The notes: generated by a model not told the origin, from the letters alone. Counted from the stretch's first letter, positions 17,293-46,032 are shown. The stretch is 64,000 nucleotides of DNA from Macrostomum lignano (GCA_002269645.1 NIVC01000019.1:1426001-1490000), one strand, 5' to 3'. Made by a program: numbers and translations.

Positions 17293-17463
17293 GATTTGTT
17301 TACCGCGCGGTAGGCGGCTTGCGACGCCACTGTAGAGAGCGAAGCCGAGAGAGAGAAAGTTATGTGCTGTGTGTAGCCGATAAAGCCTCAAGCTATTGTA
17401 GGCTCTGTGCGATCGATTTATATATTTAGCAGCGACCCTGCAGTTGAGACTGCAGCGTACATT

Positions 17464-17843
17464 GAGCCTCTTCATATCACCGATTCGAAAAACGGAACCG
17501 GTTCCGAACCAGTTCGACGCTCTTCATATTGATGGTTCGAAAAACAGAATCAGTTCCGGAACATGGTTCTGGTTCTAGAATATGGTTCGAGAAATTTTGT
17601 CGAACCGTTGTCATGTTTACACTTTAACAGTAAAATATATTTGAAATCGTCAATTTTTTATTATTGTTATATAATTATTCCTTTTCTGTCATATCCAATA
17701 GGAAACAAAGTCAAAGAACGACAAAATTAAATTGTAAAGACTGTCAAACATAAAATGGGTTCGAAGCTCCTCATTTCACACTGGTTCTGGTTCTAGAACT
17801 CGAATTTATTCTGGTTCTAGAACCGATTTTCGTGAAGAGGCTC
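17464..17843. mobile_element. 380-bp MITE (PIF/Harbinger-like) inserted in the Gypsy 5' LTR
   Basis: 11-bp TIRs GAGCCTCTTCA...TGAAGAGGCTC and a 3-bp TSD ATT; the uninterrupted site (cgtacattaaaaacag) is seen in the other LTR; subterminal GAACC/GGTTC repeats. The superfamily call is inferred from TSD length. Confidence 0.88.
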
Positions 17844-18364: not shown

Positions 18365-18937
18365 GTGCCTAGAAATCACGCGATCTACAACTTGACCATG
18401 GAGCCACCGGCTAAGCGTGTCTACTATGTAGACTACAAGAAACTGCCAGGCGAAGCCATTTCTGGAATGTCATCATCAAAGATTGATATTCTCCTTCAAC
18501 AGCAAACCGAGGAGCGGTTTTTGGAAAAGCAAATGGACGAGCGTCTGGTCGAGCAACCGTCAAATGGAGATGGCGAGTTTGAGCTGCCCGAGGATATAGA
18601 CCTGGATGGCATGTTCAACTGCGTGCCTAGCGTTAAAGACCTCGAAAAACCTATCAACGACCTAGAAGACAGTGTCGCGAGTAACAATACCAGACGACAG
18701 ACGGATCAGTACGTCAAAAGGCTGTTGGCCTTCATGCAATCGAATCCGTCATTAAAAATTGACCTGCTGACGGCTGATCCGGAGGATGTCAACCGTTTGC
18801 TGCGAGTGTTCTACGGCACGGCTTGTAAGCCTGACGGCGGATTTTATTCACCAGCGTCGCTAATCTGCATTTGTGCGGCCTTGACACTCAACTTTCATGG
18901 AAACGTGAGTATGTGCACCTTAAATTTGCCAAAATGA
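18365..18937 (+). pseudogene. Truncated Crypton-like (tyrosine-recombinase transposon) N-terminal fragment
   Basis: SNNTRRQT...VNRLLRVFYGTACKPDGGFYSPASLICICAAL resembles the region preceding DUF3504 in CryptonA and ZMYM/KCTD1/KIAA1958-type proteins; a gtgagt donor follows at ~18906; no catalytic part seen nearby. Confidence 0.55.
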
Positions 18938-19532
18938 CAGTACCTTTTTTACAACTACTTTAAAATGGACAATACTGCGAAAGTGACGCAAGCCTCTCAT
19001 ACAGTTCTTTGCAGTTGTTTCGTTAAATTCTTATTAAAATATACACACTGACAAACCATGTTAAAGTTTTGCCATAGACATCAATTATTTGCACGCTTTT
19101 TTATTATCAGCACGCTTTTTGTATAGACTGACTATAGGATTTTACCATAGACAGGCGTTATCTGCACGCTCGAGCGTTGTACAATGGTAGTAGGGACCTA
19201 ACCTCTAATCCGCAGATCAGAACGACAAACATAAAACCAGTTGCCTGAACTGCATGGTTACCATAAGCAAACAACTAATCATGTGGTTGTGCGAGTGAGG
19301 GAGAGGGAGAAACAAATGCCAATGCCAATTTACATTACAGCTTTTTGGATATTTGCAATATTCAACTCAACCGGTACCGATGATGCATTCATTCAATTTG
19401 ATTCGGCAAATACATATATTTGCTCCGAGATGCGGTAGCATATTTAGTCAGGCATTTATCTCACGACTGCTTTGCTCCTGCCTAGCTTCATCAGCGCGAC
19501 ACAAACAGAATAGGACCCGTGGGCCAGGCAGA

Positions 19533-20792
19533 ATGCTGACTGTTGCCTCAGTCCTTCTCTGTCTTCTGACAGCTGCTTCGGCTGCTACTGACTTCGAAGC
19601 GGATCTGCAGCGATACCTGAAGAATATTCCTGGCTTCAGTCCTGCGCTGTACCCGAGAATCAACTCGACTACGAGTCGCAACAAGATGCTCGACGTATCC
19701 TTCAATGCCATGCTCAGCCACATCGTGTCGGTGGACACGGCTCAGCAGAGCATGACAGTGTCTCTGTTTTTGGAGACGACCAGAGAGGAAGAGCGGCTCG
19801 TGTGGAAGCCGGCCGATTTTGGCGGCATTAACTACACCCGATGGGACGCTTCCCTCATTTGGCATCCAGAAATAATGCTATACAACGGCAATGGCGCCGA
19901 GCAAGTCCTAGTGCCGTTCAGCCACGTTGGGCTGACTTCGGTCAACGATAATTTGACTTCGGTGAATACTAAATGGCGTCGGGAGTTCGAATTCTATTGC
20001 AAATATGTTATGGCTGATTTTCCATTTGATTATCACTCCTGTAACCTTTTGCTGTTCTTGAATGACATGGAATACCTAGGCTCTATTCGACCAGTGATCG
20101 CTAATCCGGAAATTCGGTACAATATCACTGCGATATACAGGGAGAGCAGCGAATGGATTCTGACTGAAGCCACTACCGAAGTTAAAAAAGAAGATTACTA
20201 CATTTTTGAGAACAAAATCTTTCCAATAAACGTTTATCATCTGACACTGAAGATAAAGCGCGTTTCGACGTATTACATAGTTAATGTGATCATTCCGCTA
20301 CTACTTCTGACTCTGCTGCAGTTGCTGCTGTACTTTGTGCCTCTTGACTCCGGCGAGAAGCTGGGCTTCGGTGTCACCATCATGCTCAGCTACACTGTGT
20401 TCCTGCTCCTGCTTGACGGAATTCTGCCGAAGTCGGAGGACATGCCGGCCATCGCCCTGTTCATCACGGCCGCCATGGTGTTGTCTACCGCGTCGCTGCT
20501 GCTGACGTCGCTGACCATGCGGTTCCACTTCGCGTCGCCGACCGCGCGCATGTCGGCCTGCGCTCGAGCGGTCTTCGTCCGATTCCTGGGCCGCCTGCTC
20601 TGCCTGAACCGGGTGGGCCCGTCGCTCGCCGACGGTTCAGCTCGAGACAAGCCGGAAGAAGTTGGCGATGCTCCGACTGAGTCGGACTGGGCCGTGGCGA
20701 CCCGAGCTGTCGAGAGAGTCCTGATGCTACTCGGAGTGACCGCCACTGCCGTCATCATTGGCGCGTTCTTGTTCCGGTCGTATCCGGCTTGA
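19533..20792 (+). CDS. Intronless Cys-loop ligand-gated ion channel subunit (non-alpha nAChR/5-HT3-like, cation-type pore), paralog A
   Basis: Signal peptide MLTVASVLLCLLTA; WHPEIMLYN; C-x13-C loop CKYVMADFPFDYHSC; M1-M4; M2 GEKLGFGVTIMLSYTVFLLLL; no vicinal CC in loop C; 419 aa in one ORF. Confidence 0.93.
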   Translation: MLTVASVLLCLLTAASAATDFEADLQRYLKNIPGFSPALYPRINSTTSRNKMLDVSFNAMLSHIVSVDTAQQSMTVSLFLETTREEERLVWKPADFGGINYTRWDASLIWHPEIMLYNGNGAEQVLVPFSHVGLTSVNDNLTSVNTKWRREFEFYCKYVMADFPFDYHSCNLLLFLNDMEYLGSIRPVIANPEIRYNITAIYRESSEWILTEATTEVKKEDYYIFENKIFPINVYHLTLKIKRVSTYYIVNVIIPLLLLTLLQLLLYFVPLDSGEKLGFGVTIMLSYTVFLLLLDGILPKSEDMPAIALFITAAMVLSTASLLLTSLTMRFHFASPTARMSACARAVFVRFLGRLLCLNRVGPSLADGSARDKPEEVGDAPTESDWAVATRAVERVLMLLGVTATAVIIGAFLFRSYPA

Positions 20793-20972
20793 AGCAGTGG
20801 CGGATCCAGAAGGATTGCTGAAATGGATGAAACATCTTTAAAAAATTTTCTTTAAATTTGCTACTTCTTTTTTGTTTATCTGTTCTTCTAGCACACTTCT
20901 CTTAGTTAGCAGTGCACCAGTTCTAATGTAATCCATAATGAACTAATGTAAAATGACTTTTGTACGTGCTAA

Positions 20973-21180
20973 AGCGTTCTTGTTCCGGTCGTATCCAGCA
21001 TGAAGCAGTGGCGGATCCAGAGGGATTGCTGAAATGGCTGAAACTTGTATTATTTTGTCTTAAAATTTGTTAAATCTCTCTTGTTTCTCTGCTATTTGTT
21101 CCGATTTGTTCATCCGTTCCTCTTTGTTCGCAGTGCACCAGTTTTAAAGTAACGCATAATTAACTGATTTTTAAGTACGA
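20973..21180 (+). repeat. Tandem duplicate of the last codons and 3' UTR of channel paralog A
   Basis: gcgttcttgttccggtcgtatcc..tgaagcagtggcggatccaga..ggattgctgaaatgg repeats 20762-20830, and similarity continues to gtgcaccagtt. Confidence 0.85.
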
Positions 21181-22071
21181 GCTAGCTCGTAAAATGGCAG
21201 ACTAGTAGAAGAGCACGTTACGCAGAGGGATTTCTTAAAAAATTTACGAACAAAACGGATTTATTTAAGGAAGTCCGATTCCGCATTGACCGTAGTACTC
21301 GTGCAATTTACACCACATTTGAGTCTCATTTCTACCATTTTAATCAAATTGAAACCACCGGCGAGAGAGAGAGGAAGAGTCTTGGCGGAATTGTAAGCGG
21401 CGACCCTAAACGTCTTGGCGTTGTCAATTAATTAGAGAGGCGATTCCTGGTTTCGCCACGAATCGGCGCAAGCCAAATACAGAATGACTTTTGCTGTCAT
21501 GTCCATGAGAAGTATCTAAGGTGTAACGTGAGAGGTGTACAGCACGAGTGTTAAGCAAGCAGGTAAACTGAGCATTGAGGATTGAAGTGTTTAGCTCGAC
21601 CGTCTGTTATGGGCGAATGTCAAAAAGTCCAAATTTTGAAAGAGGGGCTACGAGCTAGAGGCAAGTACTGACAGCCGTGCTGTTTAAGTACGTCCTCGGG
21701 AAATTTTTAAATGATTAATAACACACAGAATGACAGTCAAGCGCATCTTTGTAAGCTTTTATAGGTGTGAAAGCGAACAGCAAGGGGCACAGCGCGAGTT
21801 TCGCAAGCGAAGCATTCGCGTGAGAAATATCATCTGGAAAAGTCGGTATTCAAGGCCGTTTATTGTCTTCATTTTGTCTCTTGTCTGACAGAACGCTGTG
21901 ACATACTCGTAAAATGCTAAAACGTCATCAAGGTAGTTGCGAAGTAAAAAATAAAGTATTTCCGGTTTCATCTGATCATTTTTGCAGTGGTTCAATAATT
22001 TATTGCTTCTAATATATAGAGAGGTCGCTGGCTTCCTGAAGGACATGTTAGAATTTTCAGAGCCAGACAAA

Positions 22072-24289
22072 TGATGTAACCGCCCTTGTCGCCTGCCCGC
22101 TCCGTAGAGAGACGAACGCATGACTAGAGGGGGCAATGACCGTAGGCTGCCTATGACCGGGCAATGACCTGACGGACCTCCAGCACCAGACTGTCCCGCC
22201 CACATGATTAGTAGCTTTGGTAGCGCTTCGTGACCAGAGGGCCAAGGACCCACATGGACCCCACCTGTAGCCAAGGTGCAATAGTTGGTCACTCGGTCAT
22301 AGTATGACCGAGTGGCTGCCACCACTCTATGTGACCTGGCGCACCTGGATCTTTCTACCAGACCTCTCGAGGCTAGAGCCCCGCCTGGATTGGTTACCAG
22401 GGGATTTAGGCTAACAGGGGAGACGCATGCAGCCGAGTACAGGGACTCTGCTTGGGGCATGATCGGGAACTCTGGGCTCAATCCTGGAGGATTTCTCAGC
22501 AGGGGATCCTTTGTGGCTGTGAGCGAGGCTGACTTGCGACTTTGATTACTAAGAGTAGTATGAGGCGAACATGTACTGTCTACAGTTTAGATTGCTCAGG
22601 GCGAAGGGACGCGTTAGCATGGGGTTGCAACCTTCCTACTGCCATTCTGTGCCAAGACTCGCTAATCCCTCTACTGCACGCACACGCGGCCCCGCAGCAC
22701 GCACTCACAGGCGGGCTGTGCACGGGGAGAGGCCATTAGCTTACCCAAACTTCCTTATGCTTTGCCACCCCGGGGGAAAGGCTTAGCAAGCCATGAGTGA
22801 AATGATGGTGAAAGATTGAATAATGATGAAGTTAGTTAATAGTTAATAATTAGGCCCTTAGGCAAATAAGCAGGCAATTAGGCGGCTTCACTATTGAGTA
22901 AAATACAGCAAAAGATACGGTATCACAATTGGCTCAGCTCTCTAATCAGACAATGGAAAATAGGCAAACCCCGGATAAGCAAAGGCAATTAGAGCACAAA
23001 TTAGTAGCAGGAACTTACCGGCAGCTGCACAGAGAGAGAGAGAGGCGGAGTGACCGAGGGCGGCTGTAGGCTGCAGTCAGGCAGACGGTGAAGCGGCGAT
23101 GCGCTGGAGCGACGAGGCGCTGATGTAGATCAGGCGATGCTGATGATGCTGGGCGGTATCAGACCGCTGGCCGATAGGCGAGCTCACTTGGGGAGCTAAG
23201 GATAACTTGGCGGTAACAGACCGCGGACCGGCAGGGATTCGTCTTATAGACGAATGGGTCAGAACTCAATCTGACAGCAAGTCCAAAGAAGGACGAGGAG
23301 AGGAACAGAGATAAACTCAGTTGAGTATTCTCATGCCGAAATCGCTTCCTTTTATAGACCTCACAGCCGCCTCCTCAAGGTCGTTACCATGGCTCCCTCT
23401 CTCTGATTGGCTGCCGGCAGAATGACGTCAGAATGAGTCATGATGAGAAGCATGAGACCGGCATAGCAACATGAGAAATCGGGAAATTGCGCAATCCGGA
23501 GGTGGGGTGGGGGGATAATTGGCGCAGCGGGTGGTCGCGAAAGTGTTGCGCAAGCAAACATTGAGAACAATAGGGCTGGGGTCGAGAACAAAGGAATTGG
23601 AAATCGGGGATAATTGGGGAAAACTGAGAACAATGGAAAAGTAAACATTGGAGAAAAGGTGATAATTAGGTGCGAAAACGAGAACAAAAGAAAGAGAAAA
23701 TCGGAGAAAATGTGATAATTGGTGGGGGTCGAGAGAACAAAAGAAGCAAAAACGAGAACAATAGAAGCGGAGGTGGGGTGGGTGTCACATGAGAAATTTG
23801 GGAAGGAGAACAATAGCGTGAGAAAAGGTTGCGCAAGAGAGGGGGATGAGTCATCGATGAGTCATCGGGGGGAAGAAGGGGTCACACGACTTGCGTCACC
23901 GTTTGGGAGTTTGGGAGGGGATGGGGAGACGGTGAGCACACAAAATACTGTAAGTAGACACAGAGAAGGAGGGGACAGCGCAGGAAAAGAGTGCAGAGAG
24001 AGACAAAAAGAGGGGGGAAAGGGAGAGTACAAGAAGAATAGGGTGGAGTGCAGGGGAGATAAGGTAGAGGGGAGGGTACAGAGAGGGGTAGGGGGCTCCG
24101 GAAAGGCAGGTGTGGCGGCAGGGGAGACGGGACCAAGGCAGCAGGAGGGGTGCAGCAGAGCGGGAGTCTCCAGGCCTGGGCAGAGACCTGGCCGAGTCTC
24201 GACAGCTCTGTGCAGAGGGTGCACGGGATAGGAGGCACTTTCGAAAAAGTTCCCATGCCCTATCCCGCGACCAGAGCGTGGTTACATCA
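22072..24289 (-). mobile_element. ~2.2-kb solo-LTR-like element
   Basis: Termini TGATGTAACC...GGTTACATCA form a 10-bp inverted repeat (TG...CA) with 4-bp TSD CAAA on both sides; internal minus-strand CCAAT and TATA; no recognisable protein. Confidence 0.7.
23350..23410 (-). promoter_or_regulatory. CCAAT box plus TATAAAA inside the solo-LTR-like element
   Basis: Minus strand has CCAATCAG (~23410-23403), TATAAAAGG ~50 bp downstream, and a gtaagt donor at ~23019. Confidence 0.45.
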
Positions 24290-27200
24290 CAAAGAAAAAT
24301 TGCGACTTGACTTACTTGACTAAGCTGCAGGGCGGTCCGAAGACACAGCGGGGAGGCGAGCGTCGCCCATTCCGCTAATCCCTGGAAGGCCCGCATAGGC
24401 TAGGGCGCGGGGCCGGTCAGGGAGGTCTGCCGGTCCTGTCTGCAGCGTTGTCTTCGGTGGGGAAGACGGAGGCTCGCTTGGTGGCCCGGAGGAACCGGAT
24501 GAGCCGTGGGATGTTCTCGGGCCGGCAAGCGTCGTCCAGGGACGGGTTGGGCCCGAGGTGATTGAGCCGGTCTCGGTTGAAGGCCGGGCAGTAGCAGATG
24601 AAGTGCTTGGCGTCTTCGTTCTCGAGGTTGCAGAAAGGGCAGAGTTCGCTCCAGCGAACACTTCGGAGGAAACAGTGCCTGGCAAAGCAGCCGTGACCTG
24701 TGAAGGTCATAGTGAGAGCGCGGATATTTTTTCGATTTTGGTCCAAAAGGATTCTCCGCAGTTTGAGGGAGGGATTGGGCACTGCCGCACGGGATTGGCG
24801 GCAGTTGGAGATACCATCCCATCTGCGCAAGTGCAGGATGTCCGCCCAGTCGTTAATCCGACGATTAATGACTGTGGCGGGGATGGGGGCCAGGGGCACG
24901 GGGTTAAGGAGCGAGCCGGAAAAACCCGCCTTAGCGAGGGAGTCGTTACCTTTGAAGCCGGCGCGTCCTGGGATCCACGGAAGCCGGGCGGTGTTCCTCC
25001 GAGCCAGCTTGTTGAGCTGCTCGATACAGTAGTGGTGTGACACAGGGCCTGCAAAGCGGCCTGGCTGTCAGAGTGAAAGAAGATTCTTCTGTCTTTGAAG
25101 TTCCTGCAGTGGAGCTCAGCTGCACAGGAGTTGATGGCAAGGACTTCGTTCTGGAAGACGCTGGAGAGTCTACCAGCGTGCTGGGCGTGAGTGGCGATCA
25201 CGCGGCCGTTGATAAGGATGCAGACTCCAAAGCCGGATAAACCGTCTTTGGAGGATCCGTCAGTAAAGCAGTGAACCTCATGAGGGGCCCAGCTGTCGTT
25301 GGCGTTCTCCCTAGAGGGGATCGTGACCTTGAAGCGTTGGTAGAGATTGAGGGAGCACGGCTCAGCGTCCGAAAGGACAGTCGCACTCCCACTCTCCTCC
25401 AGAACTTTAAGGCACAGGTCAGAGTGCGGCAAGAGCTTGCGCTTCGCCATCGCTCTTTGTGGCTTGAAGCTAACGCCAGCCTCGATGAACCGGCGGGTGG
25501 TTTTAGCAGCCTCGCGACGGACGAAGATGTCCAGGGGCGGGAGGCAGAGAAAGGCGTTGAGGCCGTCAAAGAGAGCAGAGAGCGGGGCATTCAAGATCAT
25601 GCGACATGCGCGTTCCTGCACTTTTTTAAGGGCTTCGTGGCAGGTTTTAATCTGCAAGACGCTGGTCTAGACCAGGCCGGCGTAAGTGACGGCCGGCCGG
25701 ACCATTGCGGTATAGATCCACCAGAGCCGCTTTGGGGTGAGGCCCCAGGTGGTGCCGACGGCTCTGCGTAGCTGCGCAAGAATCGCGAAGGCTTTTTTGG
25801 TTTTGGCCTGAACGTGGGTGGACCAGCTCAGCCGGTGGTCCAGCGTAACGCCGAGACACTTGATTTGCTTGCAGGATGGGATTTCCACCCCGTAAAGCTT
25901 TAGTGGGCGAATACGCCAGTTAACCCTGCTGGTGAACATGATCGCGACAGTTTTGGTCTCGGAGAGCCTGAGGCCGCACCTGTCCGCCCATTGTTCAGCA
26001 GAGCGAATAAAGTTTTGCAGAAGATCCCTAAGGGTTTCAGGTGACGGTCCGAATGCCACGGCTGTGACATCATCGGCGTAACCGATCTTACGGATGGGGT
26101 CAAGATGGATGTCCTGGAGGAGCTCATCGATGACCATGTTCCAGAGAACTGGAGAGAGGACACAGCCCTGGGGGCTGCCTTTGCAGACGGTTACCGTCCG
26201 TTGGTGGCCCAACAGGTGTGCGGTGGCAGTACGGTGGCTGATCATATACATGATCAACCGGGTGAGGTGCGAGTGGGTTCCTCTAGTACGTAGAGCTCTG
26301 TCAAAAGCCTCTGGAAGAGCCTGGGCGTGGCGAGGGTGGCATCCAGCACCTCCGATCGGCGTCCGTTATTGAAGGTAGGGGTACTACCCGAGTTACAGAA
26401 CTCAAGGGTTGTAGTAGCTATATAAGCCAGGAAGTCTTCACCTATCTGGTTAATATCAGAACTGCCCCAGTGGGGAAGGTGGGCGTTGATATCGCCTGCC
26501 ACAAGCAGCTCATAATTTCTGGTGGAGCAGAGCTCGACCAGTGTGACAAGCTCTCCTGGGATCATCTCGCCGTCGCCTGGTAGATAAACCGAGGCGATGA
26601 GGGTAGTCCTCCCAGGGAGTATGTCTTCGGATTGGATGACGCAGATGTCCCTGGTGGACAGGTCCGATCTGAGCCATGCGTTAATAGAACTGGACACCAT
26701 GATGCAGGATCTTGGTGCCAGGTTTCCCTCCCGGGTGCCAGCGGTTAGACACTGATAGCCGGTGGGGACATGTTGGGGGCTGCCCCTTAGCGTCCAAGGT
26801 TCCTGGATAAGGATAATCCTTGGTGCGTATTGGTCAGTGCATGTGCTTCAACAGGTTGACTGAAGCAGCAATGCTGTGCTGCAGGTTGACCTGCAAGCAG
26901 TGAATGCCCTGGGAGACAGTCATCTACTGTCCAGGGGATGAGAAAAGCAACTCATTCTCAGCCTCATCGGTGAGAGTTGAGTCGCCAATTTCCATTGGCT
27001 CGACAGGCTCAGCCTTGTTATGGCCTTATGGCCTGTTAATGGCCTTGTTAGGCTCGGGATCGGGTTGCTGCTGCCGCTTGGCCGGCGGAGCCTGAGCCCC
27101 AGCTCCGGGTGCGGCACGCTTCCTGTCGTTCTTAGTCTCCACCTTGCCCTCCTCGCAAGTGGAGACCAAGGTGGAGGTTTGAGCCGTGCGGTAGCCGCTT

Positions 27201-27324
27201 GGCCCATCCTCCGTCAGGCCGAGGATGATGGTGGCCCCGGTCGTGCCCTTGCGGACCGTGTTGTGGTACACAAGACCACTGGCGTCGAGATCCGGGTGCC
27301 GCTTGAGCAGGAGCTGCCACAGCT

Positions 27325-30300
27325 TGTTAAAGAAATAATCAAGTCTAATAAATCTGAGGGTTAGACTTTAACAAAAAACAGGTAAATGAGCCCTGTGGCT
27401 TAATTATTGCTTATATATTAAATTAAATCGATGTTCTCTCTCTCCAACTCTCTGACTCAACAACGCCTCACGCACATCAACCCCACCCCAACACACTCTG
27501 AGACGGGGACCGCCAAGTGTACACTGGCGACGCTACACATAGCAGAGGGTCGGTACGCAGGCACTCCAAATCCAATACACTCCCCCTAATGATGCTTCAT
27601 CATTACAGTACTTAACATTGATATTCGAAAAAAGAAACTCGCTATTAACTTAAATGAAATTAAACGAAACGAATAGCAAAAAACAAACGAACAACAAAAA
27701 ACGCTCCAACATTACAACAGACTTGATGACTAAAAATGTGACACACCATCACCAGAGTACTGAGTTAACGAAAAAGTAGGAACAAAGGGAAAACGAAACT
27801 CAAAAAAATCCAATCAGCGCTAAGGAGCTCAAAAGGTAAGATTGAAAGGGAGTGAAAATTACTGCGAACTAAAACTAAACAGAAACTCGAAACAACGATT
27901 AGAACAGTCATTGAAAGTCAGTTACTTAAGTTCATTCAGTTTTCACAGCTTCCAGCAAAATCAGGTTCTCCACCGGTCGGCGAATCAAGCATCTCCTGGG
28001 ACCGCGGCCAGGTCTGGGCGCGACTCGAACCGTTGCAGATCTCACCGCCCCGTCTCGGCCAGGATGCACCGACTCGATGACACCGGTACACCAGGTAAGC
28101 CTCGGCTGCCCGGCCTCACCTTTCACCAGGACGATGTCGCCGGCCGTCGCTTCTCGAGTTACGCCATGCTTGGGACTTAGATTATGTTCTCGCAGGCTGG
28201 TCAGATACTGTCGCTCCCAGCAGTCCCAGAAGGCTTGCAGTCTGGCGCGCATTCGCCTCAGCAGTGTTGGCAATGGCAGCAGGAGCTCGGGCGTACCGCT
28301 AGAAGTTGGCTCCGCCGTCAGCCGTTGCAGGACCAGAAAGTGCGCCGGCGTCAGGACTTCTCCGTTGGTTTCGGCATCCACGTAGAGTAGAGGCCGACTG
28401 TTGAGCACCGCTTCCACCTCCATTAGCACTGTCCGCAGTTCGTCCAGCGTCAGGGTTGCGTTGAGGATGGTCTTGCGCAAAGCCAGCTTGATGTCCCTCA
28501 TCAGTCGCTCCCAGAAGCCTCCTTGCCACGGTGCGCGTTCGACGATGAATTGCCAGGTGATTTTCCTGGTGGCGCAGAAGTCTTGAACTTGTCGACTCTC
28601 CGACGCCTGAAGTATTTTGGCAGCCTTGGTGAATGTCTTGGCGTTGTCACTGATGAGATTGGGAATTCCTCTCCGAGCACAGAACCGTCGGAGGGCTCGC
28701 AGGAAGGTCTCGGTCGTCAAGTCGCTCACCAGTTCCAGGTGAAGGGCTCGCGTGGCCGCACAGGTGAAAACCAGGATATAGCCTTTCTCGATCTCTGTGT
28801 CCTCCACAGTTTGACAGGTCCGCAGTAGTCGAGTCCGCACCACTCAAAGGCTCTCCCAGACTTCACGCGTGCTTCAGGTAAGGCTGGGATTTGCTTCACT
28901 GCATATGGTAGTCCTTGAAGACGTCTGCAGACAAAGCAACTTCTCAGGATCGACTTGACTCGCTGTCTTCCTCTGATTAGCCAGAATCTCTCTCGCAGCT
29001 TACAAAGAGTGCTGGGCACTCCCCCGTGCAGAACCTTGGCGTGAGCGTCCCAGATGAGAAGAAGCTCCAGGTGTGACTTGCTCGGGATCAGAATCGGACA
29101 GTCAACCTCGGCAGAGGCGTTGGACTCCTTCAATCGACCTTGGCTTCGGAGAATACTCTTGTTGTCGAGAAAAAGATTCAACTGCCTGCTGAGATCTGTA
29201 CTGGCCGCTGACTCCTGAATGTGAGCAATTTCGGCTTGAAAACTCCGTCTCTGCACTTCTCGCAGCCAGCGCTCTTCAGCTTCAAGGACTTCTGCTGCAG
29301 CCAGTGGTCCCACTCGCTCCTCCCCCGCTGCAGAAGTTCTAGCTTGCAGTTTCTGACGAAGCGTAGGACATAGGCTGTCACCCGAATCAGCTTGATCCAG
29401 GATGAGAAGTTCGTGTCATTGAGAACTTCCTGTAGACTGATGTCAGGACCGGCTTCAGTTAGCAGAACAACTGGACGGTTCGCTTGTGTCTTCTGCTCCT
29501 CGGCAACTGCCGCTGTCGGTAAGCTGAGAAAGGATTGGTCGGGCCAATCGTCAGGAGGTCGTGCCAGCCAGTCTGGACCGTGCCACCAGCTGTCGTCCGC
29601 CTTCAACTTGCTCGCTGATGTTCCTCGAGATGCAACGTCCGCCGGATTCTCCTCGCCTGGGACATGTCTCCAGGCATCCTCTGGCACCAGGCGGCGGATC
29701 TCCGTCACCCGATTATGAACAAAGAGCTTCCAGGGTCTGTGCTGCCGGATCCAGTAGAGCGTGTCGGCACTGTCTGTCCAGCAAAACACCTGGCGAACCT
29801 GAGGATACTGACTCATGGATGATGTCAACAGTCTGGCGAGTATCAAGGCACCCAGGAGTTCGAGCCGAGGAATTGAAAGAACCGACAGTGGAGCCACTCT
29901 CGCCTTGGCGGCCACCAGGTTGCAGCTGACGGAACCATCGGTGTACTGCACTCGCAGGTAAAGACACGCCGCATAGCATTTGATTGACGCATCACAGAAC
30001 CCATGCAGCTGTATCTCCTCGACCTCCTTCGTCGCCGAAAGCACCAACCTTGGAACTTGAAATCGACCTGCCAGCATCTCCTGCAACCACTTCAGCCACT
30101 GCTGCTTAATCGGCTCCTTTAGCGGGCAGTCCCAAGCGATCTTTTCAACGCACAGCTTCTGGAACATCGATTTCGGCAACGTAAGCAGCGGAACCAGGAA
30201 GCCCAGAGGATCGTAGACACGGGCCAGCAGCTGTAGCACGACACGCTTGGAGGGCGACGCCTTGAGCAAATCTTCTGGCGGAGAAAACTGCAGCACGAAC

Positions 30301-33300
30301 ACGTCCGATCCTGTCTCCCATCGCAGCCCGAGGACTTTTGACGATACGCCATCTTCGCCCAAGGAGGCGGCTGAATAGCTGGAGGGGTCCTCCGTGATGT
30401 CCTTCGTCACCGCCGACAACGCCGGAGCAAGAACATCACTGTCAAGTGTGCTGGCGCGAACCGCTTTCAATACATTCTTGCTGTTGGACTGCCAGTGTCG
30501 CAGATTCATTCCAGTCTGTTGGAATATGTGCCGGGATTTTTGGATGAGATCCAGGGCCTGCTGTTCATCCACGCACCCAGAGATCAGGTTGTCCACATAG
30601 ATTTCTTTGGACACCTTATCCACGAACTCTGCATGCTGGCCTCGGTGAGATGCCAAGTGGTGTTGAATGACAGTCTCCAGGACGGCAGGTGAGCAGGTGA
30701 GTCCGAACATCAGAGCAGCGTAGCGCAGAACAACGAGAGGTGAATCAGCTTGACTGGGATCCCGTGGCCAGAGGAATCGTAGAGCATCGCGGTCGTCTTC
30801 TGCAATTCGGATCTGCAAAAAAGCCTTCTCAATATCGGCAGTCAAGGCGATCGGATGAAGTCGAAATGCCTGAAGCAGTCGCGGAATCTCGGCCAACGAA
30901 CAGGTTCCTGTTTCCAGACAGTCATTCAGCGATGGACTGCACTGATCTCGCTTGGCACTCGCGTCGAAAACCACTCGAACTTTGGTCGATTCAGCTTCAG
31001 GACGGATTACGGCTCGGTGGGGTAGGTAGTGGATGAGATCGCTGGTCCCATCTGGAGCTTCTTCGACTACGCCAGCTTCCTTCTGACTGGTCAGAATGCG
31101 GTGGTACTCCTGAAGTAGCGCAGGCTCACGACGCAGCCTCGTCAGATTGGTCTTTAGTCTCTTGAACGCTACCTCGAAGTTGTCGGGAAATCTTAATTCC
31201 TTTTTGGGAATCTTCCACGGCAGCTGAACTGAGTAGCGACCCTCTTGGAACTGGGCATTCAGAGTCAGTGGACGCTGATCAGGCTCGGCTGCACTTCTGA
31301 TACCGAGACCTTCTAAAGTCCAGAACGCCTCGATGGTGCTGCTGTCCAGACCTTTCTCCGCTCCTTGAGCACAGCAGAGAAGAACCTGCTCTGACCTGGT
31401 CTCTAGCTCACTTGCGGCGAACCCATCTGACAGTGACCCGCACAGCAACCAACCGAGCTGACTGGATACGGCAACTGGACCGGAGCCGACCTCTGAGCGA
31501 ATCACTTGACCTGTGACGAGGTCGTAGAATTGGTCAGCTCCGATGAGGATACTGATCTCGGGATTCTGTTCACCACCGATGTCCCAGTCTGCCATGTCGA
31601 GGTGTTGAAAGTGCTTCATGCACAAGCTGCTGACAACTGGCTGATGAGAGCAGATGTAAGGCACTGTGTTGGCGCGCACTGTGAACTGGGCGGTGCTGTC
31701 AGATTTCCGAAGCTTGAACTCGACCATCGCAGTCTGCAGCACCTTGGCCTCTGTGCCACCGAATGTTGTCACCTCCATCGTCTCTCTGCCCATGACCTGG
31801 AGCCCCATCTTCTCAGCCAAGCTGGTCAAGATGAACGAACGGTTGCTTGCAGAGTCAAAGAGAATTCGCACCGGAGTCTCCTGATTGTTAACAGTCGAAA
31901 TCAGTACAGCTCCCGCTGTTGGAAGGATCACTGTTTGAGCTTTTGTCACCATAGCCATGGTCTTCACTTCTTGACTCTTCACATTCTGTGCAGCAGCCTG
32001 CTCGGACTTCTTCCGGTCTTCTCCCACCTTTCCAAGTGTGGAGCCGGGTGCCTTCGGTCCATCCTTACCCTGCAGCTTCTCCATGCGTGCGCTACAGAGA
32101 CTTGGGTGATGCTTCATCTGGCAGAATTCACATTGCTTCTTGTGGTAGCAGGTCTTGACGCTGTGTCCCTTGCAGAGACAGCTGAAGCAACGCCTCTGCT
32201 CCTTCAAAAACTGGAGTCGTGCCGCAACGTCTACCAGGCGAGTGCACTTCTCTGGAGCATGTTCAGTTTCGCAGAAGGGACAAGCCGTGCTGACCTTTTT
32301 GACCTTCGTGTGAAGCGCAGCCACTGTGCCGCCATCCCTTGTCTGTTTCTCACCAGCAGTCTTGGACGCTCCATTGGAACCGGACGTCTGCCCTGCAGCT
32401 CCAACGGCCGCCTCCTCCCAGACTAAAATCTCCATTTCCAAGACCTGCAGAAACTCCGTCACAGAATCTAAGCCATTGCCATCCCTCATCTGCGACAAGC
32501 TGCTACCAAAGGAATAACCGACGGAAGCAATCCGAGCAGTTCTCAGCATCCCGAGACGAACGACTTCCGGCAGCTTCGCCAGCAAGTTGGGCAGCAACAT
32601 GGACTCGTAAGATTCGACACTCACCCGAGATTCGTCAGACTGCGGACATTTCCATTGACTTGGTCGTAGAAATTCCTCAGGTGCTGTGCCGACGAACTGG
32701 AGCAGGTCAGCACCGAGAACTTTGCCAGGTGCTCGCGCACGGCTCCGTTGCGGGATCCAAATCGTCGTTGCAGGTTGTCGATGGCGATATGGTAGTTGTC
32801 CTTCGTGATGTTGAGACCAGCGATCGAGTTTCGGGCTTCCCCAGACAGACACGACTGCAGGTAGCTGAATTTGTCGACGACACTCAGGCTCGGGTTGTCA
32901 TGGATACTGGAGTTGAAGCGGTCCCAGAATTCCGTCCATTGGGTCCGATCGCCACTGAATGACGGTGGCGGCAGTTTTGGCAACCTGATGGTAGTCTGAG
33001 TCCTTGTCGTTGAAGAATTCTCTTCCGAAGACTTGGACGAAGTCGTCGTCTGTATGGCTGTATTCTGCAGCAGATTTGTTGCCTGCGGCGTGCCGGTCCG
33101 CGCGGTCTGAAGCTCCTGGAGCCGTCTGGTGAGGTTCGAGATCAATTTGCCAGCCAGCAGGTCGTACTCCATTGTCGTCTCTGCTTCAGCCTGCACGTCC
33201 TTCTCGTCAACCTCCGCGGCGAGCTCTTCATCTGCTGCTTGGAGCTGCTGCTTCTTGAACCGTAGAGCCTCTAGAACGCTGTCGATTTCATCTTCAGCAG

Positions 33301-33719
33301 CATCTGTTTTGAGCAGGTCTTCGGCTTTCTGTGCCAGTCTGGTGACCGTCGCTCGTAACACGCCTCTCTTCCTGGAGTCCATGCTGTTGTTGAAAAATCG
33401 CTGAGTCACTGTAGCACTCTTGCGCTCACTGCTTGATTTTACTGTGATTTTGGTTCGGGCGCCATGTTAAAGAAATAATCAAGTCTAATAAATCTGAGGG
33501 TTAGACTTTAACAAAAAACAGGTAAATGAGCCCTGTGGCTTAATTATTGCTTATATATTAAATTAAATCGATGTTCTCTCTCTCCAACTCTCTGACTCAA
33601 CAACGCCTCACGCACATCAACCCCACCCCAACACACTCTGAGACGGGGACCGCCAAGTGTACACTGGCGACGCTACACATAGCAGAGGGTCGGTACGCAG
33701 GCACTCCAAATCCAATACA
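27325..33719 (-). mobile_element. Full-length BEL/Pao LTR retrotransposon nested in LINE ORF1
   Basis: 255-bp TG...CA LTRs at 27325-27579 and 33465-33719, identical by eye; 5-bp TSD CAGCT; PBS TGGCGCCCGAAC (matches the tRNA-Lys PBS start); PPT attagggggag. Confidence 0.96.
27932..33382 (-). CDS. BEL/Pao Gag-Pol, broken by three single-base frameshifts in this assembly
   Basis: DUF1759-like FSGDRTQWTEFWDRF; Pao triple Cys-His cluster; protease ILFDSAS; RT YLPH...TADIEKAFLQI...YVDN; Pao RNase H FCDAS; integrase LDYCGP, ISDNA, GFWERL. ORF pieces 33382-32621, to 29178, to 28726, to 27932. Confidence 0.88.
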
Positions 33720-35396
33720 CAGCTGTTTCCCGAACTTGATTGCGCTGTCGGCCGGGACCCAAATCTGATGGCGGATGGTCTTCGGCCGCTCGCTCTCCAG
33801 GGCGAAGGTCAGCTGGCCCGGGTCGCTGTGCCAGTCGAACTTGGGCAGCTGATCCCGCAGGAGCTGGGTGCTTTCCTCGGATTTGCACCACAGTAGGATG
33901 CACCCGTTCGCCTTGGTGGACTTAACGATGTCCACGAAGACGCTCTCCAGGGTTAGATTGAGCAGGCCCTCGTCGATGGTGCGCCACGCGACGTCGAGCT
34001 GCTCGGGCGTCAGGTCGAAATCCCCGCCGAAGATCATCACGGCGGGTTGCAGCGGCTGCTTGACCTTGGAGGCGTAGGACTCGGAGGTCTTGAGCGGGGC
34101 CGCTTTGTACTTGGTAGGTGTTAGGCCGGCAGGGTTGTCCCCCTGAGAGTTCGAGGATACGGCGGTTCCTGACGCGTCACCGGACCCCCCAGAGGGCTTC
34201 CCTCCCGCGGTGGCTCCCGAAGGCCCGCCCTCCGCGGACGCAGCAGCAGCCCGCTTCTCCTGCCGCTTACGGTTGCGGCGGATATTTTGCTGCCGTCGGG
34301 ACTCGGCCGTGCGCGGTCGGCTAGACTGGCGGCAAAGACTATCGGCAGCAGCGTCAGCTGGCCCGGTTGGACCAGGTTGGACTTTGGAGCTACCAGTGGT
34401 AGCTACCGGAGCGGCTGATCCCGGTGGGCCAGTGGCGACCGGGTCAGTTTCGTTGGTAAAATTGGCGTTAGTGGCCATAGCTGAAAAGCGGAGGAGGGCT
34501 ACTCGTTATGCGAGTTGAGTACCCGACTGGCCTACACTCCAAGCCAGCCGGTTTGAAAAAGGGACCGCTAGCGACCGGACTACTCCCCGGCTTTCCAGCC
34601 CATTGGAACGGTCGATCACCATAGGCATTAGAGGGTACGTTAAGCAGTACCACGGCCTGCAGGCTGGTAAGCCGGACCCGCATACCCAAATTCGGCCGAA
34701 GCCACTGGATGGGTCCCCAGCGCTGGAACCCAGTCTGTCCAGCAGCCCTAGGGTCTGCCTTGAACACACGCGGGGACGTCATTCCAAGTGCTTGTGAATC
34801 ATTGAAATTATCACAAATCATTGAAATCATTTTTGCTGCTCAATCCCATATTTAATTTTATTGGGTCTACAGCAATTATTGTCAACCAATCATGTAGATT
34901 ATCTGTATCTACATACTGACAAAATAGTTACAGCCCTTAAAAGAGCCGTTTTATTACGTATCAGCTTCAGCTTACAACCTAATAAATATTGAAAATACGA
35001 GCGTATTGACTGAGTGACAAACTCAGATCCCCAAAAGCTGCAATCGATTTAGATTGTCAATAAACGTGCATGGAGTATGGAGTTACACGTATAAGAAATC
35101 GTTTATTTCGCAGTAGCCACTTACTGGCATATTTTTAAGCAAGTTTCAGAAAATGGAAAATTTACCATAAGCAGGAAATTATTCTTGCGATTTCTTGCAA
35201 GAGAAAGAGAGACGGAAATCAATGCAGCCAAATGCTAATACATGCTCCGTATTTAAATCAGGACTTATTTGACATTTTCAGAATTAATCGAAACCAGTGG
35301 GTGATGCATTCAATTTCGGCAAATATTTAGTCAGATACTTACTTCAATCGTTGCTACTACGAGACACAAACAGAATAGGACCCGTGGGCAAGCAGA

Positions 35397-36650
35397 ATGC
35401 TGACTGTTGCCTCAATCCTGCTCTGTCTTCTGACAGCTGTGCCGGCTGCTACTGACTTCGAAGCGGATCTGCAGCGATACCTGAAGAATATTCCTGGCTT
35501 CAGTCCTGCGCTGTACCCGAGAATCAACTGGACTACGAGTCGCAATAAGATGCTCGACGTATCGTTCAATGCCATACTCAGCCACATTGTGTCGGTGGAC
35601 ACGGCTCAGCAGAGCATGACGGTGTCGCTGTTTTTGGAGACGACCAGAGAGGAAGAGCGGCTCGTGTGGAAGCCGGCCGATTTTGGCGGCATTAACTACA
35701 CCCGCTGGGACGCTTCCCAGATTTGGTATCCAGAAATAATGCTATACAACGGCAATGGCGCCGAGCAAGTCCTGACGCCGTGCAAGCACGTTACGTTGAC
35801 TTCGGTCAGCGATAATTTGACTTTAGTAACAACCAAATGGCGTCGGGAGTTCGAATTCTATTGCAGATTTGTCATGGCTGATTTTCCATTCGATTCTCAC
35901 ACCTGCATCCTTTTGCTATTTTTGAATGACTTGGAATACTTGGGCTCTGTTCGGCCAGTGATCGCTAATCCGAAATACAATATGACTGGAATATACCGGG
36001 AGAGCAGCGAATGGATTCTGACTGAAGCCACTGTTGAAGTTAAAAAAGAATATTACTACATTGTTGAGAACTTAAACATTCCTATAAACATTTACCATCT
36101 GACACTGAAGATAAAGCGCGTTTCGACGTATTACATAGTTAATGTGATCATTCCGCTACTACTGCTGACTCTGCTGCAGTTGCTGCTGTACTTTGTGCCT
36201 CTTGACTCCGGTGAGAAGCTGGGCTTCGGCGTCACCATCATGCTCAGCTACACTGTGTTCCTGCTCCTGCTTGACGGAATTCTGCCGAAGTCGGAGGACA
36301 TGCCGGCCATCGCCCTGTTCATCACGGCCGCCATGGTGTTGTCTACCGCGTCGCTGCTGCTGACGTCGCTGACCATGCGGTTCCACTTCGCGTCGCCGAC
36401 CGCGCGCATGTCGGCCTGCGCTCGAGCGGTCTTCGTCCGATTCCTGGGCCGCCTGCTCTGCCTGAACCGGGTGGGCCCGTCGCCCGCCGACGGTTCAGAT
36501 CGAGACAAGCCGGAAGAAGTTGGCGATGCTCCGACTGAGTCGGACTGGGCCGTGGCGACCCGAGCTGTCGAGAGAGTCCTGATGCTACTCGGAGTGACCG
36601 CCACTGCCGTAATAATTGGCGCGTTCTTGTTCCGGTCGTATCCGGCTTGA
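35397..36650 (+). CDS. Intronless Cys-loop ligand-gated ion channel subunit, paralog B
   Basis: 417 aa; same architecture as 19533-20792; Cys-loop CRFVMADFPFDSHTC; M1-M4 segments identical to paralog A. Confidence 0.93.
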   Translation: MLTVASILLCLLTAVPAATDFEADLQRYLKNIPGFSPALYPRINWTTSRNKMLDVSFNAILSHIVSVDTAQQSMTVSLFLETTREEERLVWKPADFGGINYTRWDASQIWYPEIMLYNGNGAEQVLTPCKHVTLTSVSDNLTLVTTKWRREFEFYCRFVMADFPFDSHTCILLLFLNDLEYLGSVRPVIANPKYNMTGIYRESSEWILTEATVEVKKEYYYIVENLNIPINIYHLTLKIKRVSTYYIVNVIIPLLLLTLLQLLLYFVPLDSGEKLGFGVTIMLSYTVFLLLLDGILPKSEDMPAIALFITAAMVLSTASLLLTSLTMRFHFASPTARMSACARAVFVRFLGRLLCLNRVGPSPADGSDRDKPEEVGDAPTESDWAVATRAVERVLMLLGVTATAVIIGAFLFRSYPA

Positions 36651-37082
36651 AGCAGTGGCGGATCCAAAAGGATTGCTGAAATGAATGAAACATCATTTAT
36701 ACTTTTTTCCTTAAATTTGCTACTTCTTTTTTGTTTATCTGTTCTTCTACGAAGTAGCACGTTTTTCTAAGTTATAGCAGTTTCATTCAGTTCTAAGGAA
36801 ACCCGTAATTAACTGATAAAACTTATGTAAAACGGTACTACATTGTAGACTAATAGAAGGGTGCACTACCCTGAAGAATCCCCTAATTTTTTCAAGTTAA
36901 ACGATTTATTTGTACTCTTGCAATTTGCACCATAGATGCTTTCATTTCAGTCTTCTTCATAGCATCATTGTCGATGTTTTTGTTTGCCGACAAGCTTAAA
37001 AAAGCAAAATTGAGAGGAATAGGCGAACAGAGTACGCTGGGAATTGCTCTTAATATTGAAATAGCCCAGCTCGCAAAATTAA

Positions 37083-40102: not shown

Positions 40103-46032
<5,930 letters not shown>

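What the first reader, a model, noticed from the sequence alone, without database searches (positions are those of the whole stretch)
19533..36650. Intronless Cys-loop channel paralogs with a conserved pore and diverged ligand-binding loops: candidate flatworm chemosensory receptor family
Seen: two single-exon subunits ~15 kb apart. From M1 to the C-terminus (~180 aa) they differ at only 2 residues, both in the M3-M4 loop. The stretch from loop A to pre-M1 has ~25 substitutions plus a 2-aa indel, densest around loops E, F and C (e.g. VPFSHVG/TPCKHVT; DYYIFENKIF/YYYIVENLNI). Both lack the loop-C vicinal cysteines and the loop-B Trp, have Phe at the loop-D Trp position, and keep a cation-type GEK/9'Leu pore. 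Known: cephalopod chemotactile receptors are intronless, tandemly arrayed, nAChR-derived, lack ACh-binding residues and diversify in the binding pocket. Inference: this may be an independent, undescribed sensory receptor expansion.
Basis: partly seen in the sequence, partly recalled or inferred. Interest (0 to 1): 0.85.

Follow-up and report, generated by a model that had tools for sequence, protein, structure and literature searches.

The report
Flatworm orphan nicotinic-like channel gene pair
Two neighbouring intron-free genes in a Macrostomum flatworm encode unusual nicotinic-receptor-like ion channel subunits that lack the usual acetylcholine-binding residues, but their identical pore halves come from gene conversion, not special selection, and a sensory role is untested.

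Summary
Two intact single-exon Cys-loop channel genes (19533-20792 and 35397-36650, both +) are 92% identical. They differ at 2 residues from M1 to the C-terminus, and at 26 residues plus a 2-aa indel between loop A and pre-M1. The loop-B Trp, loop-D Trp and loop-C Cys pair are missing. The cation-type GEK/9'Leu pore is kept.

The host is a Macrostomum flatworm. The genes belong to a small Macrostomum-only clade with 5 distinct intact gene types known. It is monophyletic in 49/49 NJ bootstraps and at most about 36% identical to any other protein. All members are intronless, and M. lignano carries a 3-gene tandem array.

The selection reading does not hold. Synonymous divergence is also mosaic (dS 0.29 in the divergent ECD segment, 0.034 from M1 to the end). 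Older paralogs show the TM region has no synonymous constraint. A third sequence groups with copy A in the central ECD but falls outside A+B elsewhere. This is gene conversion. ECD dN/dS is 0.39, significantly below 1. Loops E and C are 0.6-0.8, not distinguishable from neutral.

It is a new flatworm example of the known lophotrochozoan intronless tandem nAChR-like expansions. Ligand and tissue are unknown.

The parts
19533..20792 (+). Copy A: single-exon gene for a 419-aa nAChR-like pLGIC subunit (signal peptide, ECD with Cys-loop C156-C170, M1-M4)
   Evidence: ORF; Pfam; AlphaFold model pLDDT 86.5 with the full nAChR fold
35397..36650 (+). Copy B: single-exon paralog, 417 aa, 92% identical to A
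19258..21326 (+). Approximate full extent of duplicated unit A. The non-coding flanks align to unit B at about 78-81% with indels. No poly-A tail.
   Evidence: blastn core 19495-20890 at 93.8%; local alignments of flanks score above shuffled nulls; sequence read
35162..36953 (+). Approximate full extent of duplicated unit B
19848..20252 (+). Divergent central ECD segment of A (aa 106-240: loops A, E, Cys-loop, B, F, C). Its partner in B is 35712-36110. dS 0.29, dN 0.11, omega 0.39. This is the part that escaped homogenisation.
20253..20890 (+). 3' homogenised tract of A (M1 to stop plus about 100 bp of 3' flank). Its partner in B is 36111-36749. dS 0.034. It contains a 253-nt perfectly identical run.
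19495..19847 (+). 5' more similar tract of A (38 bp upstream plus aa 1-105). Its partner in B is 35360-35711. dS about 0.11, omega 0.09 for aa 19-105.
20763..21184 (+). Local 211-bp tandem duplication at the 3' end of copy A (last 30 coding nt plus 3' flank, repeated at 20974-21184)
27325..33720 (-). BEL/Pao LTR retrotransposon inserted between the two genes. Its 256-bp LTRs are 100% identical, so it is much younger than the duplication.
   Evidence: Pfam; repeats
24417..26700 (-). Non-LTR reverse-transcriptase fragments in the spacer between the two genes
   Evidence: ORFs; RVT_1

Best explanation
These are two same-strand paralogs of a small clade of intronless nicotinic-receptor-like pentameric channel subunits found only in Macrostomum. 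Shown: each gene encodes a complete subunit with a cation-type pore (GEK, 9'Leu) and an nAChR fold. The orthosteric site is non-canonical: the cation-pi Trp of loop B is Met/Leu, the loop-D Trp is Phe, and there is no loop-C Cys pair. Shown: the pair arose by DNA-level duplication of a unit of about 2 kb, similar to the 2-3 kb units of the three-gene array in M. lignano. It was later spread to 15 kb by retrotransposon insertions. Shown: the mosaic similarity is produced by gene conversion. Conversion homogenised the M1-to-3'-flank tract strongly and the 5' third more weakly. The central ECD segment, which carries the binding loops, stayed unconverted at the age of the duplication (dS about 0.3, flanks about 79% identical). 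Shown: both copies are under net purifying selection, so both are probably functional. Inferred: the subunits do not bind acetylcholine in the canonical way. They are either orphan receptors for another ligand or non-binding partners. A and B probably differ in ligand or interface specificity, because loops E and C evolve nearly neutrally while loop B, loop F and the Cys-loop are constrained. Selection against converting the central segment is possible but not demonstrated.
For: Gene models, domains and fold. Binding-site and pore residues. Organism. Clade: exhaustive HMMER over 1.84 billion representatives finds only M. lignano proteins as close relatives, and every other protein is at most about 36% identical. 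An ECD-profile word search finds only P0001, P0002 and P0129. NJ monophyly 49/49 with stem length 0.67. Intronless tandem array in M. lignano: L001 7884-9188, 10001-11305, 12825-14105, plus a truncated copy at 16333-16674. DNA-level duplication: flanks are alignable at about 79% and there is no poly-A. Gene conversion: dS is 0.29 (aa 106-240) against 0.034 (M1 to end). Synonymous-only codon counts are 14/102 against 5/170, Fisher p=0.0011, and the 253-nt identical run has P<1/20000 under uniform differences. Region-wise incongruence with P0001: in aa 106-240, 26 sites are unique to B and 6 unique to P0001; in aa 241-419 the counts are 0 and 5; Fisher p=0.0011. Control: older paralogs have M1-M3 dS of 0.7-1.5, so TM synonymous sites are not constrained. 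Purifying selection: omega is 0.39 in aa 106-240, binomial p=0.002 against neutrality. By loop: E 0.59, C 0.81, A 1.33 (not significant), B 0.13, F 0.21, Cys-loop 0.22.
Against: The maximum chi-squared test on pure synonymous codons alone is only marginal (permutation p=0.063). P0001 is known only as protein, and whether it is an orthologue, homeologue or paralogue is unknown. The incongruence argument therefore shows recombination but not its direction. No B-type ECD was found in M. lignano proteomes; this could mean loss, missing annotation, or fast evolution of B. There are no data on expression, assembly or ligand. Two-sequence dN/dS cannot detect site-specific positive selection.
Confidence: 0.8

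Rival explanations
1. The clade is a flatworm chemosensory receptor family convergent with cephalopod chemotactile receptors. Its binding pocket diversifies under positive selection while the pore is held constant by selection.
For: It shares genomic and sequence hallmarks with CRs: intronless, tandem, nAChR-derived, canonical ACh residues lost (CR features in PMC11526382). Loops E and C have the highest omega (0.59 and 0.81) and are not distinguishable from 1. Across the clade, ECD dN is 4-5 times pore dN. The central ECD is exactly the part that escaped conversion.
Against: Region-level omega is 0.39, significantly below 1. Pore identity between A and B is due to conversion, since the synonymous sites are also identical. 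Only 5 distinct intact gene types are known. No expression or ligand data exist. Differences also fall in the Cys-loop, which is not part of the pocket.
Confidence: 0.12
2. They are non-alpha 'structural' or accessory subunits that co-assemble with canonical alpha subunits into heteromeric acetylcholine receptors. In that case their own degenerate binding loops are irrelevant.
For: There is no loop-C Cys pair, which is the formal definition of a non-alpha subunit. The cation pore is strongly conserved and the loop-A Tyr and loop-C Tyr190 equivalents are kept. The best sequence and structure matches are heteromeric muscle and neuronal nAChR subunits. The NJ sister group includes an Aplysia 'unc-29-like' beta-type subunit.
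Against: The loop-D Trp used by complementary-face subunits is also lost, and the loop-B Trp, which is W in 49 of 54 aligned relatives, is absent across the whole clade. The very long stem and lineage restriction are unusual for core synaptic subunits. Net purifying selection on the ECD loops (omega 0.13-0.22 in loops B and F) suggests that the ECD does something specific.
Confidence: 0.25
3. There was no gene conversion. The duplication is very recent, so the TM halves are identical, and the central ECD of B diverged rapidly through positive selection or local hypermutation. A variant is that B's centre was imported from an unseen third paralog.
For: 26 of the 28 differing positions (26 substitutions and 2 indel positions) in aa 106-240 are unique to B relative to A and P0001. 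No B-type ECD was found in M. lignano proteins.
Against: Synonymous divergence in the central segment is itself high (0.29). That value matches the roughly 79% identity of the non-coding flanks, which indicates an old duplication. P0001 has 5 unique changes in the TM half where A and B have 2 and 0, so A and B were homogenised after P0001's lineage split off. The import variant is still a form of gene conversion and is not excluded.
Confidence: 0.06

Closest known systems
Lophotrochozoan expanded intronless, tandemly arrayed nAChR-like genes (Jiao et al. 2019, BMC Genomics, PMC6896357)
   Same: Intronless, in tandem arrays, lineage-specific, divergent in sequence, and from a spiralian host. 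The NJ sister group of the Macrostomum clade is a set of gastropod proteins (Batillaria, Bulinus, Aplysia), several of them fused tandem gene models.
   Different: That study sampled molluscs, an annelid and others but no flatworm. Those expansions reach 99-217 genes, whereas only 5 distinct intact gene types are known here. The sister relationship rests on an NJ tree only, and identity is at most about 36%.
Cephalopod chemotactile receptors (CRT1, CRB1; van Giesen 2020, Allard 2023, Kang 2023, as summarised in PMC11526382)
   Same: nAChR-derived cation channels, intronless, lacking canonical ACh-binding residues, with variation concentrated in the ECD.
   Different: No close sequence relationship: every non-Macrostomum protein is at most about 36% identical and the clade is monophyletic. 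No evidence of diversifying selection (omega 0.39). The family is far smaller. Sensory expression and hydrophobic-ligand gating are untested. No CR chain is among the 50 listed structural matches, which are all nAChRs.
Alvinella pompejana Alpo4 orphan nAChR-like receptor (eLife 2023, PMC10338036)
   Same: A lophotrochozoan nAChR-like subunit without the loop-C Cys pair, not responsive to ACh or 5-HT, with an unknown ligand. It is a precedent for an 'orphan' status.
   Different: Alpo4 keeps the aromatic cage, including loop-B W159 and loop-D W65. The Macrostomum clade has lost both Trp residues.
Vertebrate and invertebrate alpha7/alpha9-10/ACR-16-type and muscle nAChR subunits
   Same: These are the nearest named sequences by distance and the best PDB matches (E about 1e-40; TM-score 0.72-0.79 normalised to the query, 0.73-0.89 to the target). 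They share the same fold, Cys-loop and GEK/9'Leu pore.
   Different: Only 23-31% identity. The loop-B Trp, loop-D Trp and vicinal Cys are absent here.
Schistosome acetylcholine-gated chloride channels (SmACC; PMC4055736) and schistosome channels with an atypical Cys-loop (PMC9874803)
   Same: Divergent pLGICs specific to flatworms.
   Different: The window proteins have a cation-type GEK motif and an intact C-x13-C Cys-loop. They therefore lack the features highlighted in the titles of those papers (chloride conductance; atypical Cys-loop motif), which were not read in full.

Membership tests
Pentameric ligand-gated ion channel (Cys-loop) superfamily | Neur_chan_LBD and Neur_chan_memb domains, with four TM helices | tested here: met
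   Pfam E=4e-22 and 1e-19, above cut-offs. The AF2 model has a beta-sandwich ECD plus helices 246-266, 276-297, 306-332 and 385-416.
Pentameric ligand-gated ion channel (Cys-loop) superfamily | Cys-loop, C-x13-C | tested here: met
   C156 and C170 are invariant in all 58 aligned sequences.
Cation-selective nAChR/5-HT3 branch | GEK (-2' to 0') with Glu at -1' and no Pro insertion; 9' Leu | tested here: met
   DSGEKLGFGVTIMLSYTVF: E275, K276, T282 (6'), L285 (9'), V289 (13').
Nicotinic acetylcholine receptors (functional ACh-binding subunits) | Aromatic box: loop-A Tyr, loop-B Trp (cation-pi), loop-C Tyr190 and Tyr198, loop-D Trp | tested here: not met
   Y117 and Y222 are kept. Loop-B W is replaced by M/L, loop-D W by F, and Y198 by F/I.
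nAChR alpha subunits | Vicinal Cys pair at the tip of loop C | tested here: not met
   I224-F225 (A) and I-V (B) align to alpha1 C192-C193. There is no CC in the ECD of any clade member.
Nicotinic acetylcholine receptors (functional) | Gating by acetylcholine | not testable with these tools
   Requires electrophysiology.
Lophotrochozoan intronless tandem nAChR-like expansions (Jiao 2019) | Single-exon genes | tested here: met
   A, B and the three M. lignano paralogs are uninterrupted ORFs from signal peptide to C-terminus.
Lophotrochozoan intronless tandem nAChR-like expansions (Jiao 2019) | Head-to-tail tandem arrays | tested here: met
   A and B lie on the same strand with a TE-filled spacer. 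The M. lignano array has 2-3 kb spacing.
Lophotrochozoan intronless tandem nAChR-like expansions (Jiao 2019) | Large copy number (tens to hundreds) | tested here: not met
   Only 5 distinct intact gene types were recovered from public protein data plus two loci. Whole-genome tblastn was not possible.
Cephalopod chemotactile receptors | Common descent with cephalopod CR genes | tested here: inconclusive
   The clade is Macrostomum-only, monophyletic 49/49, and at most about 36% identical to anything else. CR sequences themselves were not placed in the tree.
Cephalopod chemotactile receptors | Diversifying selection on binding-pocket sites | tested here: inconclusive
   Region-level omega is 0.39, below 1 (p=0.002). 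Loops E and C are 0.59 and 0.81, not significant. Site models need more sequences.
Cephalopod chemotactile receptors | Expression in sensory cells and gating by environmental hydrophobic ligands | not testable with these tools
   No expression or functional data are accessible.
Schistosome ACh-gated chloride channels (SmACC) | Anion-selective pore | tested here: not met
   The window proteins have a cation-type GEK with Glu at -1'. That anion-selective pLGICs instead carry a Pro-Ala-Arg-type motif is from my own knowledge.

The most novel reading that the evidence does not exclude
The Macrostomum clade is an independently evolved environmental (chemosensory or contact-chemical) receptor family. 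It would be built, like cephalopod chemotactile receptors, from intronless nAChR-derived cation channels that lost ACh binding. Selection would keep the binding-loop segment from being homogenised by the gene conversion that erases differences elsewhere.
Probability: 0.12. Interest if true: 0.75.

Novelty: new member of a known kind. Interest (0 to 1): 0.4.

Why it matters
If followed up, this would extend the phenomenon of lineage-specific, intronless, tandem nAChR-like 'orphan' channels from molluscs and annelids to a free-living flatworm that is a laboratory model (M. lignano and relatives have RNAi, transgenesis and in situ methods). That makes the function of such orphans experimentally tractable. 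The pair is also a clean small example of domain-restricted gene conversion in a receptor gene: the pore and 3' flank are homogenised and the binding-loop segment is spared. It shows that a 'conserved pore, diverged pocket' pattern must not be read as selection without checking synonymous sites. Practically, two of the three intact array members in the M. lignano assembly are unannotated, so pLGIC counts for flatworms are probably underestimates.

Tried and rejected
1. Retroposition as the origin of the A/B pair was rejected. There is no poly-A tail, and the flanks are alignable about 275 bp upstream and about 300 bp downstream. Intron loss must be older, at the base of the clade.

2. Synonymous constraint or codon bias as the cause of low TM dS was rejected by the paralog control.

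3. An overlapping antisense gene as the cause was considered. Long antisense ORFs exist over the TM half, but a similar ORF is present in M. lignano c3 while M1-M3 synonymous sites are free to diverge among the older paralogs (A vs c3 dS 0.70, c1/c2 vs c3 0.86-0.98). It is therefore probably a by-product of Leu/Ala-rich codons.

4. The first word-indexed homology search returned only 4 hits, probably because Leu-rich TM words swamped the candidate list. I repeated it with an ECD-only profile and relied on the exhaustive HMMER search.

5. Exact-sequence look-ups of A, B, P0001 and P0002 found no records, so the species below genus level and the P0001 locus could not be determined. There is no shared repeat DNA between the window and L001.

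It was rerun without them.

7. van Giesen 2020 (PMC7605239) is not held. CR features were taken from the review PMC11526382.

8. The maximum chi-squared breakpoint test on purely synonymous codons gave only p=0.063. It is reported as marginal and not used as the main argument.

9. Inverted satellite pairs flanking the region were checked as possible ends of a large mobile element. Only the arrays match, not their flanks, so this was dropped.


Full report
OBSERVATION. The window contains two uninterrupted ORFs on the + strand, 19533-20792 (419 aa from the conserved ATG) and 35397-36650 (417 aa). They are 92% identical with a single 2-aa gap. Both carry the Neur_chan_LBD and Neur_chan_memb domains above Pfam's cut-offs. 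From M1 to the C-terminus (aa 241-419) there are exactly two differences, L365P and A370D, both in the M3-M4 loop. Residues 106-240 hold 26 substitutions and the 2-aa indel. The quoted peptide strings are present. No further copy exists in the window apart from a short 3'-end relic.

WHAT THE PROTEINS ARE. The best solved-structure relatives are muscle alpha1, alpha3, alpha4 and alpha7 nAChR subunits (E about 1e-40 to 1e-33). An AlphaFold2 model of copy A is confident (mean pLDDT 86.5, pTM 0.78). It shows the beta-sandwich ECD and four TM helices. All 50 listed Foldseek PDB matches are nAChR subunits, with TM-scores of 0.72-0.79 normalised to the query and 0.73-0.89 normalised to the target. 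In a 58-sequence alignment the Cys-loop cysteines (C156, C170) are invariant. The pore-lining M2 has the cationic signature: E at -1', K at 0', T6', L9' and V13'. The loop-B Trp is Met/Leu (W in 49 of 54 relatives) and the loop-D Trp is Phe (W in 43 of 54). The residues aligned to alpha1 C192-C193 are Ile-Phe in A and Ile-Val in B. The loop-A Tyr and loop-C Tyr190 equivalents are retained. The same losses hold for the more distant clade members. It follows from established nAChR pharmacology that canonical cation-pi binding of acetylcholine is unlikely. This is an inference and has not been measured.

ORGANISM. A 903-aa single-exon cadherin ORF at 3590-6301(-) is 86% identical to a Macrostomum lignano protein and 51% and 45% identical to two others. 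All other hits are at 31% or less. The channel's close relatives are all M. lignano entries. The exact proteins are not on record, so I cannot tell M. lignano itself from a congener.

FAMILY. An exhaustive HMMER scan of 1.84 billion representative proteins finds P0001 (95%) and two fragments as the only close relatives. Every other protein is at most about 36% identical. P0002/P0274 (50% identical; PAA92206.1) maps to M. lignano contig NIVC01000059.1 as a single 1,305-bp exon. tblastn and ORF listing of that locus reveal a head-to-tail array of three intact intronless paralogs (L001 7884-9188, 10001-11305, 12825-14105) and a truncated M3-M4 copy (16333-16674). Two of the intact genes are not annotated. 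The database fragments collapse onto these genes: P0127 is part of c2, and P0129 is a 93% variant of c3. An ECD-only profile search of 5.8 billion clusters adds nothing. That leaves five distinct intact gene types: A-type, B-type, c1, c2 and c3. In an NJ tree of 171 domain sequences the clade is monophyletic in 49/49 bootstraps on a long stem (0.67). Its sister is a group of gastropod proteins, several of which are fused tandem gene models. The nearest named sequences by distance are alpha7-, alpha10- and ACR-16-like subunits.

HOW THE PAIR AROSE. blastn aligns only 19495-20890 with 35360-36749 at 93.8%. Sensitive local alignment extends the homology at about 78-81% with indels, to about 19258/35162 upstream and about 21326/36953 downstream. 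There is no poly-A tract. The unit of about 2 kb resembles the 2-3 kb spacing of the M. lignano array. The 14.6-kb spacer is largely transposon sequence. It holds non-LTR RT fragments (24.4-26.7 kb) and a BEL/Pao element (27325-33720) whose 256-bp LTRs are 100% identical, so it is far younger than the duplication. Copy A also carries a local 211-bp tandem duplication of its 3' end.

WHY THE PORE HALF IS IDENTICAL. Nei-Gojobori estimates differ sharply along the gene. dS is 0.11 for aa 19-105, 0.29 for aa 106-240 and 0.034 for M1 to the end. Counting only codons with unchanged amino acids, 14 of 102 differ in aa 106-238 against 5 of 170 in the TM half (Fisher p=0.0011). The longest perfectly identical run is 253 nt (P<1/20000 under uniform differences). 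A maximum chi-squared test on synonymous codons alone is marginal (p=0.063). The high-identity tract continues about 100 bp past the stop codon. As a control, the older paralogs have M1-M3 dS of 0.7-1.5, so synonymous sites there are not intrinsically constrained. A third sequence gives independent evidence. In aa 106-240, 26 sites are unique to B and 6 to P0001, so A groups with P0001. In aa 241-419, none are unique to B, 2 to A and 5 to P0001, so A groups with B. Fisher p=0.0011. Together these results show gene conversion of the 3' half, and probably an older or partial conversion of the 5' third. The central ECD segment was left at the age of the duplication, which matches the flank divergence.

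SELECTION. The divergent segment has omega=0.39, significantly below neutrality (binomial p=0.002). By sub-region: loop A 1.33 (three changes, not significant), loop E 0.59, loop C 0.81 (neither distinguishable from 1), loop B 0.13, loop F 0.21, Cys-loop 0.22. Both genes are therefore under net purifying selection and are probably functional. Loops E and C are the least constrained. No positive selection is demonstrated, and two sequences cannot test individual sites. Across the clade, ECD dN (0.47-0.61) is 4-5 times M1-M3 dN (0.08-0.15). Protein-level conservation of the pore is therefore a genuine family feature on top of the A/B conversion.

COMPARISON WITH WHAT IS KNOWN. Jiao et al. [quoted passage not shown] Their text mentions no flatworm. 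Cephalopod chemotactile receptors are nAChR-derived, intronless cation channels gated by hydrophobic molecules. Their pocket sites are under diversifying selection, and there are 26 genes in octopus and 6 in squid (PMC11526382). Alpo4 from Alvinella is an orphan nAChR-like receptor without the CC tip, but it retains the aromatic cage (PMC10338036). The Macrostomum clade has the genomic style of the first group and the loss of ACh residues seen in the second, and it goes further than Alpo4 in losing both Trp residues. It does not show the copy number of the first group or the selection signature of the second. It is not an SmACC-type anion channel and not an atypical-Cys-loop channel. Searches for Macrostomum plus nAChR or ligand-gated channel literature found no description of this clade.

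VERDICT. This is a genuine, previously undescribed flatworm-specific clade of intronless, tandem, non-canonical nAChR-like subunits. However, the 'conserved pore, diverged pocket' contrast between the two copies is mainly a gene-conversion mosaic under purifying selection, the family is small, and a sensory role is speculation. I rate it a new member of a known kind, with moderate interest (0.4).

Noticed in passing
window 3590-6301 (-): A 903-aa single-exon protocadherin-like ORF with six cadherin repeats in a GC-rich (about 0.65) stretch. It is 86% identical to M. lignano A0A1I8GZ04 ('PCD16') and 51% and 45% identical to two other M. lignano cadherins. This suggests a Macrostomum cadherin paralog family with large single exons.
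   Followed up: partly
window 27325-33720 (-): BEL/Pao LTR retrotransposon with gag (DUF1759), protease/RT (Peptidase_A17) and integrase ORFs. Its 256-bp LTRs are 100% identical, so the insertion is very recent and the element is possibly still active.
   Followed up: partly
window 13234-17475 (-): Intact 1,413-aa Gypsy-type gag-pol ORF (PNMA-like gag, zinc knuckle, RT, RNase H, integrase) with a 12-mer repeat at its 3' end (13249-13430).
   Followed up: no
window 8188-9070 and 52019-53284; 11341-11530 and 41290-41499: Two satellite families (a 28-mer and a 21-mer) each occur twice in opposite orientation, nested symmetrically around the channel-gene region. Only the arrays match, not their flanks.
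   Followed up: partly
window 1-1729: An (ATCT)n microsatellite of about 432 copies at the window edge, at 99% purity.
   Followed up: no
window 20763-21184: A 211-bp tandem duplication of the last 30 coding bases and 3' flank of copy A. The second copy is about 89% identical to the first.
   Followed up: yes
window 20390-20758 (-) and 36248-36760 (-); L001 13667-14062 (-): Long antisense ORFs (122-170 aa) lie over the M3-M4 half of both channel genes, and a similar one lies in an M. lignano paralog. They are probably a by-product of Leu/Ala-rich sense codons, but the recurrence was not examined further.
   Followed up: partly
L001 7884-9188, 12825-14105, 16333-16674 (M. lignano NIVC01000059.1): Two intact intronless pLGIC genes and one truncated copy flank the single annotated gene PAA92206.1 and are not annotated in the public record. 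Flatworm pLGIC counts based on annotation are probably too low.
   Followed up: yes
search hits P0125, P0126, P0128, P0130-P0135: Many of the highest-scoring database proteins are 800-1,200 aa gene models containing two or three complete pLGIC units. They come from bivalves, Owenia, a hemichordate, a tardigrade and M. lignano. These are most likely adjacent intronless tandem genes fused by gene predictors.
   Followed up: partly
window 18365-18937 (+) and 37512-38276 (+): ORFs just upstream of copy A (weak QRICH1-domain hit, below cut-off) and downstream of copy B (Gln/Ser-rich, no Pfam hit). Their status as genes is unknown.
   Followed up: no
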